DNA of 64,000 nt from Macrostomum lignano (taxonomy: Eukaryota), in contig NIVC01000049.1 in NCBI GenBank assembly GCA_002269645.1, positions 259,578 to 323,577 of the forward strand, read 5' to 3'. This document shows positions 30,173 to 42,790 of this stretch, one piece after another. The translations under genes were made by a program, and so were the position numbers. The notes below the pieces were generated by a model. That model ran no database searches and was not told the DNA's origin. It saw nothing but the letters and a program-made list of their open reading frames with translations. The first letter of the stretch is position 1. Every line of letters begins with the position of its first letter.

Positions 30173-31465
30173 CCAAGCAGCGGCAAAGGACACTGCGGCA
30201 GCAGTGGCGCGGGTGTCGGCGCCAGCGAACCAACCGGTAGCAGCGGTGTAGCAGCCAACAGCAGAGTCGAGTTGGACGCCAGCAGTCCGTCTGTTCGTCT
30301 GAGCCACCGTCAGTCGCGCCTGTACGCCGATGCAGTCTCGGTGTTCCGTGCCCAGGGCCCGCTGACTGATACTAAACGCGATTTGCTGCGAAGATTGCGC
30401 TCGCTATTAGGCGTGTCGGATGTCCGGCATCAGGTGGAGTGTCGTCGGGCTGTTGCCGATCCGGAGTTGGCCACCATTGCTGCTAGAACTGCCGTAGCTT
30501 CTACCAATCGAAGCCTACCTGTTCCGAACGAAGCCGATTGGGATGAAGAGGCTAGTCGAGCCGCTCCTCTTGTACATGTGGCAGCAACTGTTGCTTCAGC
30601 AAAGCAGCAAAAAAAGCCGGAGTTAACAGCAGACTCGCCGTCTGATTCGGCTGGCGCTGACGCCGCCGCAGGTCCAGCAGCTGAGCCGCCAACCACAACG
30701 CAGCAGGAAGTGCACCAGCTGCCAACGAGCAGTGCTACTCCCTCGTCTGCTCCTGCATCGCCTCCTGTCAACGATTTAATATCTATACCGGATCCGCTGC
30801 CGGCTATGTCATCAACAGCGTCTGTTCTACCATCGGCTGTAGCCAGTTTGCATCCGTCTGCTTACGCTTCAACTTTCACCTGGGCCTCAACTTCCGTTGA
30901 TTCGTTCGGCTTACAAAAGTTGGATCATAAGAATAGTACTAGTAGTAGTAGTAGTCACAATCGAGTGGCTGCAGCAAAATTGTTGAAAACTTCTACAACT
31001 GTTACAGCGGTAGCTAAATCGACAACGGTGCCTGCAACAGCGATGGCTGTCACTAGCAATGGTACTAACAGTAAGCCGAATACTGACCAGCGTAGGAAAC
31101 AGCAGTTCCGCCGGGTGGCCTTATTGGTTGCTAATGACAACAGCAGTAGAGGAGGCCTAGGCTTTGCCAGTATTCAGCAAGAGGCCGACAGCACTGCAAC
31201 AATCGCAGGTACTAAGCGGCCGTACAGTCGAATCAAATCCAGTATGGAGATGCTGTTGGAATCTGATTCGGATGAAGAATTCACCGCAGATATTGACGAA
31301 GATCAGCGAGAAGACATCGACCAGCTGCACAGTTTAGTTAATGAGCAGCAGCAACAGCAGCAACAGCAGACAGTTGTAGTTGACCCTGCCGTCATATTGA
31401 CTTCAGCAGCTGTCCGACAGAGTTTAACTAGACCAGTACCGTCAGGTGGAAAGGTTAGGCGCTAA
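30173..31465 (+). CDS. ENT-domain (EMSY-like) protein, large exon lacking a 5' ATG
   Basis: LYADAVSVFRAQGPLTDTKRDLLRRLRSLLGVSDVRHQVECRRAVADPELATIA matches the EMSY N-terminal domain. The track start at 30272 is TTG; acceptor acgcag|30173 is in frame. Confidence 0.85.
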   Translation, partial: PSSGKGHCGSSGAGVGASEPTGSSGVAANSRVELDASSPSVRLSHRQSRLYADAVSVFRAQGPLTDTKRDLLRRLRSLLGVSDVRHQVECRRAVADPELATIAARTAVASTNRSLPVPNEADWDEEASRAAPLVHVAATVASAKQQKKPELTADSPSDSAGADAAAGPAAEPPTTTQQEVHQLPTSSATPSSAPASPPVNDLISIPDPLPAMSSTASVLPSAVASLHPSAYASTFTWASTSVDSFGLQKLDHKNSTSSSSSHNRVAAAKLLKTSTTVTAVAKSTTVPATAMAVTSNGTNSKPNTDQRRKQQFRRVALLVANDNSSRGGLGFASIQQEADSTATIAGTKRPYSRIKSSMEMLLESDSDEEFTADIDEDQREDIDQLHSLVNEQQQQQQQQTVVVDPAVILTSAAVRQSLTRPVPSGGKVRR

Positions 31466-32476
31466 AATAGGCAGCTTTTAAATAGTTGCTTTTTATCGAC
31501 TATTTCTCGTTGTTTGGAATTATGCCAGTCTCCTTAAGTATCCAAGAAACGAAGCTCCCCGTACTATACTTCTGCTAAAGTCTGCAGTCTGTCCGTCCAA
31601 TGTCCGGGAGTCTCGTTGTCTCTAACATGTCCAACCAAAGACTTGCTGCTTTGCCCAATCTATTGTCTCTGTCATGTCTCCTTTCTCTAGTCTGTTGTCT
31701 GTTTATCTAGCTACTAGCGTTATATCGGTGTGTCGCTAATTTATCCTGTTCGTTTATTTATTCTTGCTATCTTTATTGCGTTCCCCGCGAACGTGGTGTA
31801 CTCTACAAGTAAGTACATTTTCGTTTTCTTTAAATTAAATCATTTTATTTTGATCTGTCGTCTGTGTCCACCTTCTGTTTCGATTTCTGTATTCTGTAGT
31901 TACAGCTAAACTGCTCAACCAAGGGCATAAGTATATTTATAAATATATGAAATTCGTCGTTACAATTCCTTGAAATCAAAAGATTTTTTGGGAGAGCGCA
32001 AATGATTTGCTTATATGTGCTATTCAAGTGTATTGTTGCATAAGCCAACATAGGGTATACAAAAAATGTTGTGTATTTGTTTTTATCGCTATATTGTATT
32101 TATATTTGTAAATTATAATCATTATAGCCAAAATTGTTAGGCAAAAAAACATGTACGAAACCGTTGGCCGCCGCATATCTGGGTCATTTTTATTGCTAAT
32201 AAAAACCATTTGTACATTTGATGATTTCAACTCGCGAGTCACGAACATCCGCTTTGTAAGCAATTTTCGGTGAAGTATCTTGTTATTTATTTAGAATTCT
32301 TTAGTAGAGAAGTAGTTCTAGGCGTCTAGAGGTACAGTTAGGAAGTTTCTGCTACGAGTACTATAGCCTTTGTAGTTAGTTTGAGCATAGAAGCAGCCAT
32401 TCTAGAGTGGCAAAACTATATATTCCTTCTTTTAGACCTTAGTTTCATTATTATCATCGCAAAGCAATGCAGATAC

Positions 32477-32926
32477 CACAGGTACTAAAATAACTAGATG
32501 GCCCACTCAGCACATTTGCGTGTAAGCTACTTTTAGTTCAGTAGTAAGTTAAACAAGCATTTTAATGTATTTTTAAAGCCATTGGCTCTTACCCCCACCC
32601 CACCACCAGCTTAAACCCTCCAACCGCGCCTTTCCACACTACCCCCCGCTCCGCCCAACCCCAATTTTTATTGCCTTTCTCGGAATTCCAGCCTAAAGCG
32701 GCCATGTACATTTCAGTGGATTGGCTAATGTACATTATTGCTGAACCAATTAGCAAGCTGTTTACGCCTGCAAGATTTGGGCTTCTAAACTTATCAAAGT
32801 GATTTAAGCTGTCTTTATTTGTAAAATAGCTTCTGTATTCTTCTTTGCTACTGAACTGATAGTAGAAAGCTGCTGTACTAAGTATATATGCCTGAGTGGC
32901 CTATCTAGTTACTTTTAGTATCTGTG
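32477..32926. mobile_element. MITE (~450 bp), copy 1
   Basis: TIR CACAGGTACTAAAATAACTAGATGGCCCACTCAG / CTGAGTGGCCTATCTAGTTACTTTTAGTATCTGTG; homologous copy at 42958. Confidence 0.85.
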
Positions 32927-33158
32927 GCCCAGACTGACTGGAAAAAGTTAAACTCAATTGTAATATATAGTTTTTTTAAGGAAATTATGCTCAACAGCCT
33001 TTCAAATCGTTGACCACAGAATTCTGTGAGTCCTTACTGCAGCTTGATTCTATTTAAGAGCTTTAAGTTCACTTAAGAGGTTAACGTAATCTAGAGGGAT
33101 TATGGTTAATTAAGATGCGCGATAAACTATTTTTGCCTTTCTACTTACCTTTCATTGC

Positions 33159-41034: not shown

Positions 41035-41400
41035 TTATTTAGACTTGGCTGCAGTGGGTTCCAGACATCCATCGCCGCCCATTCCGCTAAATCCTGGCGA
41101 CCACGGGCAGCTGGTGCTGCTGTGTCTGCACTGCGGTCCCCTTCCGGAGAGTCCAGGGGGTGGATAGTCGCTCGCCCGGTAACCCTTAGGTAGCGGACCA
41201 GCTGGCAGAGATTCTCGGGCCTGAAAACGTCGGAGAGGTCCGGATTTAGGTTCAGGTGAGATGAGCCTGTCCTGAGTAAAGGCGGGGGCAGTCACGGATG
41301 AAGTGCTCCGCATTCTCGACGCCGGAGTCAGAATAGGCGTTCCTTGCTACAGATTTTTCCCTGGAGGTGATGATGCCTGGCAAAACAGATAGCACTAAGA
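41035..41400 (-). mobile_element. Probable 3' end of a 5'-truncated LINE
   Basis: Minus-strand [11 protein letters not shown] (CCHC-like remnant), then [22 protein letters not shown] in another frame, and an A-rich end. Confidence 0.45.
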
Positions 41401-41500
41401 CTTCGGGTTCAATTTTGATAGATTCGGTTTTTGCATAGCTCAATAGTGCATAGCTCCAACCATCAAACTGTTACAATATTGTCATTCGCATATTTTCAAG

Positions 41501-42790
41501 CAGTCGGACAAATCCAACACGGCAAAATCGCCCTTAACGGCGGCGGTGGCATCAAAGACAACTAAACCGACACCAACGTCTCCATCTGCGCCTGGCGACG
41601 ATGTCAGAGCCCGATCTAGACAAGCCTACATTTCACGGAAGCATCGCCAAGAAAATGACAGCGCTAATAATCTGTCAACAACGTCAAATCCAGCAGGGGG
41701 CGACACCGCCGCCGGAGATTTCAGCAAGAATTCGGTTGAAGTGAACGGGTCCAGAGTTGACAACGATATCTCTAACGAGATGGAGCAGCTAACAGTGTCC
41801 GATCCTAGCGATCATTTTGGCTCGTCGAGAACCGACAGCTCCGTGGATTCTTTGTCAACGTTTGGCAGTCCGAACCGACTGTACCCTGACCTGTCGGCCT
41901 ATGGCTACGGTACGGAGTCGATGGCCTCTCCAAGCCCGTCGCCAAGTCAGCGTCGGGGCAAAGTTCCTCCTCGGTACCGCGAGAGAAAATCTGCACAGGA
42001 AGAAAACGAATCAAAGTGCTTATATATTGTCATAGGCTTACTCGTAGTTGTTTTTGCCTACATTCTTGGCGCACGGGCCTTCTCAACAAGTGGTAGCAAA
42101 CACACGAGCAATTGTACTCTAGTTTGTATCAAAACTGTCGTACAGAGAGATCTAGCTGGCAAATTTCCCGCCCAATCGGCTCGTCTTTGGTCCACAATAT
42201 CAGCCTGTCTGACTCGCCAGTACGGCTCATCTACACCCGTTGACGCACCGTCAGTGCTGATGCTGTTCAGCAGAGGCGTTGGCAGCGGCGGCGTCGCCTC
42301 CTCCCAGCTGACGCTGAACTTTCTGGTTGGCCGACTGTCTCGCCTGTTGGCATCTGGCATCGGCGAATGCGGCTGTCGCACTTTTTCGAAGGCTGAAAAA
42401 GACGGCTGCAGCGAAGTCGAAGCCAAGACTGCCGCCACTACCGAATTGATTGACGCGGCAGCCACCGAGGCGGCGAGATCAAAGAAAAGCTGTCTGGCTA
42501 TTCACCGCATCGACCAGCTGACAGGGCCGGCCTCTTTGATCTTCTATCGCCTTGCCGACTCGACCGAAGCTCCGCACAGACCGTTTCTGTACGTTCTGAC
42601 TGTGGAGGGCGACACTGCAGGCGAGAAGGTCGTCGACGAGACGAGCTTGCAGCGTCAGTTGCGTCAGACTTGGGTGTCAAGCGGCCTTCAGACTGAGCAC
42701 TTTGATCCCATGTGGGCTCGCATTGGCGGCAACGTGGTGGCTGTGCTTCCAGAGTCTGATGGCACTCTACAGCATCTGTCGCGAAGGTAA
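41501..42790 (+). CDS. LAP1/LULL1-like paralog 4 (most divergent)
   Basis: The track start at 41546 is GTG; frame is open from acceptor ttttcaag|41501. Ser/Pro-rich N-terminus, TM LYIVIGLLVVVFAYILGA, MWARIGGNVVAVLPE. Confidence 0.87.
   Translation, partial: QSDKSNTAKSPLTAAVASKTTKPTPTSPSAPGDDVRARSRQAYISRKHRQENDSANNLSTTSNPAGGDTAAGDFSKNSVEVNGSRVDNDISNEMEQLTVSDPSDHFGSSRTDSSVDSLSTFGSPNRLYPDLSAYGYGTESMASPSPSPSQRRGKVPPRYRERKSAQEENESKCLYIVIGLLVVVFAYILGARAFSTSGSKHTSNCTLVCIKTVVQRDLAGKFPAQSARLWSTISACLTRQYGSSTPVDAPSVLMLFSRGVGSGGVASSQLTLNFLVGRLSRLLASGIGECGCRTFSKAEKDGCSEVEAKTAATTELIDAAATEAARSKKSCLAIHRIDQLTGPASLIFYRLADSTEAPHRPFLYVLTVEGDTAGEKVVDETSLQRQLRQTWVSSGLQTEHFDPMWARIGGNVVAVLPESDGTLQHLSRR

What the first reader, a model, noticed from the sequence alone, without database searches (positions are those of the whole stretch)
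30173..42790. Five consecutive genes behind phase-0 acceptors: candidate operon using a spliced-leader AUG as start codon
Seen: the EMSY-like exon (acgcag|30173) and LAP1-like paralogs 1-4 (ctcaag|33171, gaacag|34827, tgtcaag|39181, ttttcaag|41501) each have a pyrimidine-rich AG acceptor in frame with the ORF. The EMSY-like ORF has no ATG before its ENT domain, and paralog 4 has none for ~90 codons. Spacing between genes is only 0.5-2.1 kb. Known: flatworm spliced leaders end in a conserved AUG that can act as initiator Met, and SL trans-splicing resolves polycistronic transcripts. Inference: these genes form an operon and/or receive their start codon in trans. Caveat: I chose the acceptors by eye, and the anoctamin, CCDC103 and PWWP acceptors are not in phase 0.
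Basis: partly seen in the sequence, partly recalled or inferred. Interest (0 to 1): 0.75.

Follow-up and report, generated by a model that had tools for sequence, protein, structure and literature searches.

The report
Flatworm genes borrowing spliced-leader start codon
In this Macrostomum lignano stretch at least three of five neighbouring genes have no start codon of their own and most likely get it from the AUG at the end of the trans-spliced leader, a mechanism already known in flatworms; a five-gene operon is not shown.

Summary
The window is the last 64 kb of Macrostomum lignano contig NIVC01000049.1 (assembly Mlig_3_7).

The by-eye choice of phase 0 carries no weight, because each gene has 7-18 AG sites nearby in all phases.

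Independent evidence supports the start-codon idea for three genes: ENT, paralog 1 and paralog 4.
- The public RNA-seq-based annotation calls them 5'-partial, starting 0-12 nt downstream of an AG.
- Among five near-identical genomic copies, the AG/TG differences fall exactly at position -2 of phase-0 acceptors.
- In paralog 1, four copies carry the last 8 nt of the leader (ATTGCATG) where the fifth copy has an acceptor (ATCCAAAG|).
- Mlig_3_7 was polished with RNA-seq reads, so these look like imprints of leader-bearing reads.

The better junctions are 30158 (ENT), 33162 (paralog 1) and 41501/41504 (paralog 4). Paralogs 2 and 3 have their own ATGs and are untested.

Operon: ENT and paralogs 1-3 share a published transcriptional-unit name, but paralog 4 and PWWP do not. 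The operon is therefore plausible in part and unproven.

This is a known mechanism, so a new member of a known kind.

The parts
30158..31465 (+). Single-exon ENT-domain (EMSY-like) gene. Inferred SL junction is ctgc[A/T]g|CGCTCC at 30158. Predicted N-terminus is M-RSATQPSSGK or M-PSSGK.
   Evidence: Pfam ENT hit, 4.8e-12, residues 50-104. No in-frame ATG before 30806. NCBI 5'-partial CDS starts at CGCTCC in three other copies and at 30164 in the window's own contig. Copies L003 and L006 read ttctgcag|CGCTCC, which fits the [T/C]TNCAG motif.
30156..30156 (+). T at position -2 of the ENT acceptor (window and L002). Copies L003 and L006 have A. Either an imprint of the SL ...ATG tail from RNA-based polishing, or a real allele that has lost the acceptor.
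   Evidence: The T/A split (window+L002 against L003+L006) conflicts with the flanking haplotype splits.
33154..33161 (+). ATTGCATG, identical to the last 8 nt of the M. lignano SL, and containing the assembly 'start codon' of paralog 1. Copy L001 reads ATCCAAAG| here, which is a phase-0 AG acceptor with no ATG.
   Evidence: L001 and the window differ at 6 positions in 1371 nt, and 4 of those fall inside this hexamer. The Mlig_3_7 assembly was polished with RNA-seq reads.
33162..34298 (+). LAP1_C-like paralog 1, single exon, with the inferred SL junction at 33162. M-PLKRNAKRL would come from the SL AUG. Downstream of the junction, the next in-frame ATG is at 34278.
34827..37091 (+). Paralog 2, with its own ATG at 34827 directly after gaacag|. 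Contains about 22 copies of an 18-aa acidic repeat, a TM segment and the conserved C-terminal domain. Trans-splicing status unknown.
   Evidence: No variation among the five copies at the acceptor. A competing acceptor, cttttcag|34792, lies in phase 1.
39181..40167 (+). Paralog 3, with its own ATG at 39190. Trans-splicing status unknown.
   Evidence: The homologue on L001 is named Mlig030279g3.
41501..42790 (+). Paralog 4. It has a tandem acceptor, ttttca[A/T]g|cag|, giving junctions at 41501 and 41504, both phase 0. There are 93 ATG-less codons before 41780. Predicted N-terminus is M-QSDKS or M-SDKS.
   Evidence: Pfam LAP1_C scores 27.1 bits against a cut-off of 26.8. A 12-nt in-frame indel lies in the pre-ATG part. 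The first downstream ATG, at 41601, is out of frame.
32475..32923 (+). Interspersed repeat of about 430-450 nt with inverted ends (MITE-like) in the ENT-paralog 1 spacer. A second copy lies at 42957-43373, just after paralog 4.
   Evidence: (82% identity between the two copies), and the sequence as read.
37468..37537 (+). tRNA-like element (probably a tRNA-derived repeat) in the paralog 2-3 spacer.
   Evidence: Rfam tRNA, 29.9 bits. ARAGORN finds no tRNA there.
38433..38956 (+). Tandem array of a 43-nt unit, 12 copies, in the paralog 2-3 spacer.

Best explanation
This is a Macrostomum lignano cluster of five same-strand, intronless genes: one ENT-domain gene followed by four tandem LAP1_C-like membrane-protein paralogs.

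At least three of them (ENT, paralog 1 and paralog 4) are made into mRNAs by spliced-leader (SL) trans-splicing at a phase-0 AG acceptor. The AUG that ends the 35-nt leader (...TTGCAUG) then becomes their initiator codon.

Paralog 1's ATG in this assembly is most likely not genomic. It looks like the leader's tail written over the acceptor when the assembly was polished with RNA-seq reads.

Paralogs 2 and 3 carry their own ATG at or just after candidate acceptors. Whether they are trans-spliced is unknown.

ENT and paralogs 1-3 may be co-transcribed as one precursor. Paralog 4 is annotated as a separate unit.

Shown here: sequence anatomy, annotation boundaries, and differences among copies. 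Inferred: the junctions, use of the SL AUG in translation, and co-transcription.
For: 1. Organism and leader. Proteins and contigs are M. lignano Mlig_3_7. Its single SL ends in ATG, and 30% of its genes are reported as trans-spliced.

2. No usable ATG of their own.
- ENT has no in-frame ATG until codon 211, beyond the ENT domain.
- Paralog 4 has none for 93 codons.
- Paralog 1 has none before codon 369 of 379 once the assembly ATG at 33159 is set aside.
- The first ATGs after each junction are all out of frame.

3. The public RNA-seq/SL-read-based annotation makes all three genes 5'-partial. CDS starts lie 0-12 nt downstream of the inferred junctions, and there are no upstream exons.

4. Differences among copies.
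- Five copies are 96-99.7% identical.
- There are 300 variant positions and only 11 AG/TG variant sites in about 11.7 kb.
- Three of those 11 sit at -2 of phase-0 acceptors just before these three ORFs.
- My rough estimate for that coincidence is about 3e-7. This is an inference, not a tool output.

5. Paralog 1.
- Four copies read cATTGCATG|CCGCTC, which is the SL tail.
- L001 reads cATCCAAAG|CCGCTC.
- L001 is otherwise 99.6% identical.

6. The assembly was polished with Pilon using RNA-seq mapped by STAR, which gives a direct route for such imprints.

7. Precedent. The flatworm SL AUG is a documented initiator (Cheng et al. 2006, as cited). [quoted passage not shown]

8. Co-transcription. 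ENT (Mlig013867g2) and the paralog 1-3 model (Mlig013867g1/g5) share a transcriptional-unit prefix.
Against: - No SL-containing read or transcript could be inspected, so every junction is indirect.
- The ENT and paralog 4 imprints are single A/T differences and could be real polymorphisms.
- With a polishing artefact one might expect neighbouring mismatched bases to change too.
- Annotated 5' ends do not coincide exactly with the junctions (offsets of 0-12 nt), and they differ between copies of identical sequence.
- Two of the three supported acceptors are AAG|, not the commonest CAG| motif.
- Paralog 4 could also be translated from Met93 and keep its TM and luminal domains.
- Against an operon: the gaps of 0.5-2.1 kb are far above the ~100-nt mode reported for M. 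lignano operons. Paralog 4 and PWWP have other unit names. The paralog 1-3 model is a chimera across near-identical paralogs, so the unit assembly here is unreliable.
Confidence: 0.65

Rival explanations
1. The genes use the SL AUG as above, but each gene has its own promoter and outron. On this view they are monocistronic trans-spliced genes and there is no operon.
For: - About 60% of trans-spliced M. lignano genes are not in operons, and the operon spacing mode is ~100 nt.
- Here the gaps are 1696, 528, 2089 and 1333 nt, and they contain a MITE-like repeat, a tRNA-like element and a tandem array.
- Paralog 4 and PWWP carry separate unit names.
Against: - ENT and paralogs 1-3 share a transcriptional-unit prefix.
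- The published study subtracts repeats from spacers and finds repeats common inside operons.
- The paralog 1-2 gap of 528 nt is below the 1-kb criterion whatever the UTR length.
Confidence: 0.4
2. The leader-like octamer at paralog 1 is real genomic DNA. On this view a reverse-transcribed, trans-spliced mRNA recombined with the locus and replaced the acceptor with the leader's tail, so that four copies now encode the start codon in cis and one copy still receives it in trans.
For: - The patch is a clean 4-substitution replacement at the exact junction.
- All five genes are intronless, as expected after cDNA-mediated conversion.
- A published note reports SL sequence lying at the 5' end of another trans-spliced gene in M. 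lignano assemblies.
Against: - RNA-seq polishing of this very assembly explains the same pattern without any biology.
- The one copy with the acceptor also keeps an uncorrected 1-nt homopolymer deletion 35 nt downstream, suggesting it simply escaped polishing.
- Public models start downstream of this ATG and are marked 5'-partial.
Confidence: 0.12
3. The ATG-less ORFs get their start from an unannotated upstream exon spliced in cis, or start at a non-AUG or downstream codon, without any role for the leader.
For: - No transcript data were seen directly.
- In-frame TTG (30272) and GTG (41546) codons exist.
- Paralog 4 Met93 would still give a TM plus LAP1_C protein.
Against: - RNA-seq-based public models in up to five copies show no upstream exon.
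- The ENT downstream ATG would delete the ENT domain.
- Paralog 1 has no in-frame ATG downstream of the junction before codon 369 of 379.
- The first downstream ATGs are out of frame.
- The leader tail abuts the paralog 1 exon.
Confidence: 0.07

Closest known systems
[quoted passage not shown]
   Same: The leader ends in AUG. The acceptor is in phase with the main ORF. The recipient ORF lacks a usable AUG of its own, so the leader supplies it (as summarised).
   Different: This is a different flatworm (the free-living Macrostomum). Here three neighbouring genes depend on the SL AUG, two of them tandem paralogs. Translation from the SL AUG was not tested here. In S. mansoni only about 28% of junctions are in frame, which is about the chance level.
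M. lignano SL trans-splicing and operons (Wudarski et al. 2017; Ustyantsev & Berezikov 2021)
   Same: Same organism, same 35-nt leader and the same kind of multi-gene transcriptional units cut at SL sites. The genes of this locus are in that annotation.
   Different: Those papers do not discuss the SL AUG as start codon. Spacers here are much longer than the ~100-nt mode. Only part of the cluster shares a unit name.
Caenorhabditis elegans operons resolved by SL2 trans-splicing
   Same: Same-strand gene clusters transcribed as one precursor and separated by trans-splicing. This comparison rests on established knowledge, also summarised.
   Different: There is no specialised second leader in M. 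lignano. The nematode leaders do not end in AUG. Spacing in C. elegans is ~100 nt, against 0.5-2.1 kb here.
slORFs: ORFs created by the leader (slORFfinder, Brief Bioinform 2023)
   Same: The concept that the leader supplies the start codon, and that annotation pipelines miss such ORFs.
   Different: That study did not analyse flatworm data. Here the ORFs are the main conserved ORFs, not alternative ones.

Membership tests
mRNA using the flatworm SL terminal AUG as initiator | The organism has an SL RNA whose exon ends in AUG | tested here: met
   The window is M. lignano. The published SL is CGGTCTCTTACTGCGAAGACTCAATTTATTGCATG. No SL RNA gene lies in the window itself.
mRNA using the flatworm SL terminal AUG as initiator | The leader is joined to the first exon of the gene at an AG acceptor | tested here: inconclusive
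   The evidence is indirect only. For paralog 1, the SL tail lies at the exact place where copy L001 has an acceptor. For ENT and paralog 4 there is an A/T difference at -2. The public models are 5'-partial. No SL-containing reads could be examined. There is no evidence either way for paralogs 2 and 3.
mRNA using the flatworm SL terminal AUG as initiator | The SL AUG is in frame with the main ORF, and no other in-frame AUG precedes the conserved part | tested here: met
   Met for ENT, for paralog 1 (in the acceptor state seen in L001) and for paralog 4's N-terminal 93 codons. Not needed by paralogs 2 and 3, which have their own ATG.
mRNA using the flatworm SL terminal AUG as initiator | Translation actually starts at the SL AUG | not testable with these tools
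   Needs ribosome profiling, N-terminal proteomics or reporter assays.
SL-resolved operon as defined for M. lignano (Ustyantsev & Berezikov 2021) | Adjacent genes on the same strand, not interrupted by opposite-strand genes | tested here: met
   The ORF map and public annotation of four other copies show no opposite-strand genes.
SL-resolved operon as defined for M. lignano (Ustyantsev & Berezikov 2021) | The downstream genes are SL trans-spliced | tested here: inconclusive
   Indirectly supported for paralogs 1 and 4. Unknown for paralogs 2 and 3.
SL-resolved operon as defined for M. lignano (Ustyantsev & Berezikov 2021) | Repeat-adjusted distance between transcripts of at most 1 kb | tested here: inconclusive
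   Stop-to-acceptor gaps are 1696, 528, 2089 and 1333 nt. Only paralog 1-2 is certainly under 1 kb. The others depend on unknown 3' UTR ends and on subtracting repeats.
SL-resolved operon as defined for M. lignano (Ustyantsev & Berezikov 2021) | One precursor transcript spans the genes | tested here: inconclusive
   ENT and the paralog 1-3 model share the unit prefix Mlig013867. Paralog 4 is Mlig003574 and PWWP is Mlig002715. The paralog 1-3 model is chimeric.
ENT-domain proteins (EMSY-like) | Pfam ENT domain above the gathering score | tested here: met
   46.2 bits against a cut-off of 28.5, residues 50-104. Orthology to EMSY itself was not tested.
LAP1/LULL1-type torsin activators (Pfam LAP1_C) | LAP1_C domain above the gathering score, following a TM segment | tested here: inconclusive
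   Scores against the 26.8-bit cut-off: paralog 4, 27.1 bits; paralog 3, 23.4; paralog 1, 17.8; paralog 2, no hit. The four share a C-terminal domain of 58-94% identity after a hydrophobic segment. No homologues outside M. lignano were found by the word-based searches.

The most novel reading that the evidence does not exclude
The leader's tail at paralog 1 (ATTGCATG replacing the acceptor ATCCAAAG| in four of five copies) is real germline DNA. That would be a start codon normally supplied in trans, captured into the genome by cDNA-templated conversion, with both states still present among homeologous copies of one animal line. Paralog 3's ATG context (ATCCAATG|) might be a second such case.
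Probability: 0.12. Interest if true: 0.8.

Novelty: new member of a known kind. Interest (0 to 1): 0.35.

Why it matters
For biology, this is a compact example in a free-living model flatworm of conserved proteins whose start codon is not in the gene but in the spliced leader. These are an ENT-domain chromatin protein and nuclear-envelope LAP1-like proteins. Gene finders therefore report them as partial or pick wrong starts. In this window's own annotation paralog 4 is reduced to a 111-aa fragment and paralog 2 is missing.

For users of the Mlig_3_7 reference, polishing with RNA-seq seems to have overwritten acceptor AGs with the leader's ...TG or ...TTGCATG. That creates spurious ATGs and destroys splice sites. 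The same effect could be turned into a way to locate trans-splice junctions from differences among copies.

None of this changes what is known about the mechanism.

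Tried and rejected
- **Direct transcript evidence.** Protein searches returned only NCBI genome-derived models. No transcript-derived proteins starting MQSDKS or MPSSGK were found, and no RNA contigs came from the exact-protein look-ups.
- **Gene identifiers in papers and supplements.** No paper or held supplement mentions Mlig013867, Mlig003574, Mlig030279, Mlig003368 or Mlig022003.
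- **SL RNA gene in the window.** None found. Rfam finds only a tRNA-like element.
- **Poly(A) imprints or other RNA-derived substitution clusters among copies.** None convincing. The other clusters are indels or paralog gene conversion.
- **dN/dS among copies for the pre-ATG regions.** Too few differences to use.
- **PWWP as first gene of the same unit.** Rejected, because it carries a different unit prefix.
- **Names for paralog 2 models.** Not retrievable, because the products are not in the protein collection.
- **A repeat scan of 25-47 kb.** It was swamped by the ATAG microsatellite and gave nothing useful.
These are less well supported than 33162 and 30158. For paralog 1 the annotated 5' ends lie upstream of 33171. 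For ENT three copies start exactly at the 30158 equivalent.

Full report
**What the window is.** The protein products match Macrostomum lignano models of assembly GCA_002269645.1, Mlig_3_7. The window is exactly NIVC01000049.1:259578-323577, the last 64 kb of that contig. Four further copies of the locus exist in the same assembly:
- L001 = NIVC01003863
- L002 = NIVC01003864
- L003 = NIVC01003065
- L006 = NIVC01003749

These copies are 96-99.7% identical to the window over the region of the finding. That is expected for this hidden polyploid line.

**Check of the observation.**
- The ENT ORF opens only at 30143 and has no in-frame ATG until 30806, which is codon 211. Pfam places the ENT domain at residues 50-104.
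- Paralog 4 opens at 41447 and has no ATG for 93 codons.
- Stop-to-acceptor gaps are 1696, 528, 2089 and 1333 nt.
- The four paralogs share a C-terminal domain with weak LAP1_C similarity. Only paralog 4 passes Pfam's cut-off (27.1 against 26.8 bits). Each domain follows a hydrophobic segment.

The phase-0 pattern chosen by eye is not evidence. There are 7-18 AG| sites within -150..+60 nt of each gene, in all phases. Paralog 2 has a site that fits the motif better, cttttcag|34792, in phase 1. Paralog 3 has ctttatag|39155, also in phase 1.

The long ATG-less open frames are non-random. The chance of staying open is 0.085% for ENT and 1.75% for paralog 4.

**What is known about the organism.**
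- M. lignano has one 35-nt leader, CGGTCTCTTACTGCGAAGACTCAATTTATTGCATG.
- About 30% of its genes are trans-spliced.
- About 15% are classed in operons, using a repeat-adjusted 1-kb rule with a mode near 100 nt.
- The commonest trans acceptor motif is [T/C]TNCAG.
- The annotation cuts RNA-seq 'transcriptional units' at SL-read peaks and poly(A) sites.
- All reported flatworm leaders end in AUG. Cheng et al. 2006 showed that this AUG can initiate translation. In S. mansoni it is in frame in 28% of cases, and more than 40 cDNAs need it.

**Independent evidence 1: public gene models.** In the public annotation three of the genes are 5'-partial, with no upstream exon.
In L003 and L006 this is preceded by ttctgcag|, which matches the published motif. 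In the window's own contig ENT starts at 30164.
- Paralog 4 starts at TCGGAC after gcag| in L002.
- Paralog 1 starts at 33165 (window, L006) or 33168 (L002, L003).

Transcript 5' ends therefore lie 0-12 nt downstream of an AG and never include an ATG.

The annotation is otherwise poor here. Paralog 1 is fused to the end of paralog 3. In the window paralog 2 is absent and paralog 4 is a 111-aa fragment.

**Independent evidence 2: differences among the copies.** At paralog 1, four copies read cATTGCATG|CCGCTC. That is the last 8 nt of the leader, and it contains the 'start codon' at 33159. L001 reads cATCCAAAG|CCGCTC instead, which has no ATG but does have an AG acceptor at the same junction, in phase 0.

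L001 differs from the window at only 6 positions in 1371 nt, and four of those lie in this hexamer.

More generally, outside tandem repeats there are 300 variant positions in about 11.7 kb. Only 11 of them are AG/TG variant sites. Three of those 11 lie at -2 of phase-0 acceptors directly before ENT (30156), paralog 1 (33160) and paralog 4 (41499). With a background of about 7e-4 such sites per base, I estimate the chance that each of the three 5'-partial genes has one within 10 nt of its start at about 3e-7 (my calculation).

**Why the copies differ there.** The methods of Wudarski et al. [quoted passage not shown] For the transcriptome assembly STAR was run end-to-end with up to 1000 multimaps.

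Reads that begin a few bases inside the leader would then align across the junction with mismatches. They would outvote the DNA reads, and the acceptor ...AG would become ...TG or ...TTGCATG.

L001 keeps an uncorrected 1-nt deletion in a G run 35 nt downstream. That suggests junction-spanning reads mapped better to the other copies, so L001 escaped polishing.

The ENT T/A split (window+L002 against L003+L006) contradicts the flanking haplotype splits. That fits independent artefacts better than one mutation.

I cannot exclude that the single-base ENT and paralog 4 differences are real polymorphisms.

Whether artefact or real, the paralog 1 patch shows leader sequence abutting CCGCTC.

**Resulting model.** The supported junctions are:
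- ENT at 30158, with 30173 as backup
- paralog 1 at 33162, not 33171
- paralog 4 at 41501 and/or 41504, a tandem acceptor

All are in phase 0. They give M-RSATQPSSGK (or M-PSSGK), M-PLKRNAKRL and M-QSDKS (or M-SDKS).

After these junctions the first genomic ATGs are all out of frame: 30330, 33310 and 41601. A scanning ribosome would therefore miss the main ORF without the leader's AUG.

A 12-nt in-frame indel in paralog 4's pre-ATG stretch, and the absence of indels in ENT's, are consistent with these stretches being coding.

Paralogs 2 and 3 show no variation at their candidate acceptors and have ATGs in all copies. Their status is open.

Paralog 3's ATG context, ATCCAATG|, matches the L001 acceptor of paralog 1, ATCCAAAG|, at 7 of 8 positions. 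Its ATG might therefore also be an overwritten acceptor, but that is speculation.

**Operon.** Names in the annotation share a prefix when their transcriptional units cluster.
- ENT (Mlig013867g2) and the paralog 1-3 model (Mlig013867g1, g5) share a prefix. So at least one assembled unit spans ENT to paralog 3.
- Paralog 3 on L001 is 'g3' of another unit, Mlig030279.
- Paralog 4 (Mlig003574) and PWWP (Mlig002715) have their own prefixes.

The spacers contain a MITE-like repeat, a tRNA-like element and a 43-nt tandem array. The published study subtracts such repeats. Only the paralog 1-2 gap is certainly under 1 kb.

Co-transcription of ENT and paralogs 1-3 is therefore plausible. A five-gene operon is not shown, and separate promoters remain a serious rival.

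**Comparison and verdict.** The mechanism is the one described by Cheng et al. 2006, set within the framework of M. lignano trans-splicing and operons. This locus is a new instance, and it is already present in the public annotation as 'partial' genes.

The side result is that the reference assembly seems to carry leader imprints from RNA-based polishing, which create a false ATG at 33159 and a false loss of an acceptor at 30156. This is of practical use and should be checked against genomic reads.

- Interest: modest.
- Novelty: new member of a known kind.
- Most novel reading not excluded: the leader tail at paralog 1 is real DNA, a trans-supplied start codon captured in cis. I give it about 12%.

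Noticed in passing
window 33154-33161, compared with L001 about 1831-1839: The assembly ATG of paralog 1 sits inside an exact copy of the last 8 nt of the spliced leader. One near-identical copy has an AG acceptor there instead. Mlig_3_7 was polished with RNA-seq, so the reference may carry leader imprints at trans-splice sites genome-wide.
   Followed up: yes
window 43927-43936 (also in L001 and L002): TTATTGCATG is a 10-nt match to the leader's tail, about 1.1 kb after paralog 4 on the same strand, and identical in three copies. Only 7 codons stay open after its ATG and no gene is annotated downstream. It could be chance (about 0.1 expected in the window) or another junction imprint.
   Followed up: partly
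window 39185-39192, compared with L001 1832-1839: Paralog 3's start context, ATCCAATG|CTT, matches the native paralog 1 acceptor, ATCCAAAG|CCG, at 7 of 8 positions, although the flanks are unrelated. Its ATG might be an overwritten AAG acceptor.
   Followed up: partly
window 32475-32923 and 42957-43373: Two ~82% identical copies of a ~430-450-nt element with inverted ends (MITE-like), in the same orientation. One lies before paralog 1 and one just after paralog 4, so they bracket the four-paralog array.
   Followed up: no
window 33165-40167 (public model Mlig013867g5): The public gene model joins the body of paralog 1 to the last codons of paralog 3 across a ~6-kb 'intron' that contains paralog 2. 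This is probably a mapping chimera between near-identical paralogs. In this contig paralog 2 is not annotated and paralog 4 is only a 111-aa fragment (42455-42790).
   Followed up: partly
window 21606-21640: The PWWP gene has an in-frame genomic ATG at 21606, but the public models start after gacag|GTTTGACG (21628) and are 5'-partial. There the leader's AUG would be out of frame and would read a 2-codon uORF (AUG GUU UGA) before the in-frame ATG at 21654.
   Followed up: partly
window 34858-36080: Paralog 2 carries about 22 copies of a 54-nt (18-aa) acidic repeat (EAEAKTEAEAKPDQEEKT-like). The copy number differs between genomic copies.
   Followed up: no
window 25444-26756, 29069-29859, 44231-45190, 45678-46170: Long simple and tandem repeats fill much of the space around the cluster: (ATAG)n, a CT-rich tract, a 25-nt array and (CAGA)n. 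Any distance-based operon call should subtract them.
   Followed up: no
window 37468-37537: tRNA-like sequence, scoring just above the Rfam threshold but not called by ARAGORN. Probably a tRNA-derived repeat in the paralog 2-3 spacer.
   Followed up: no
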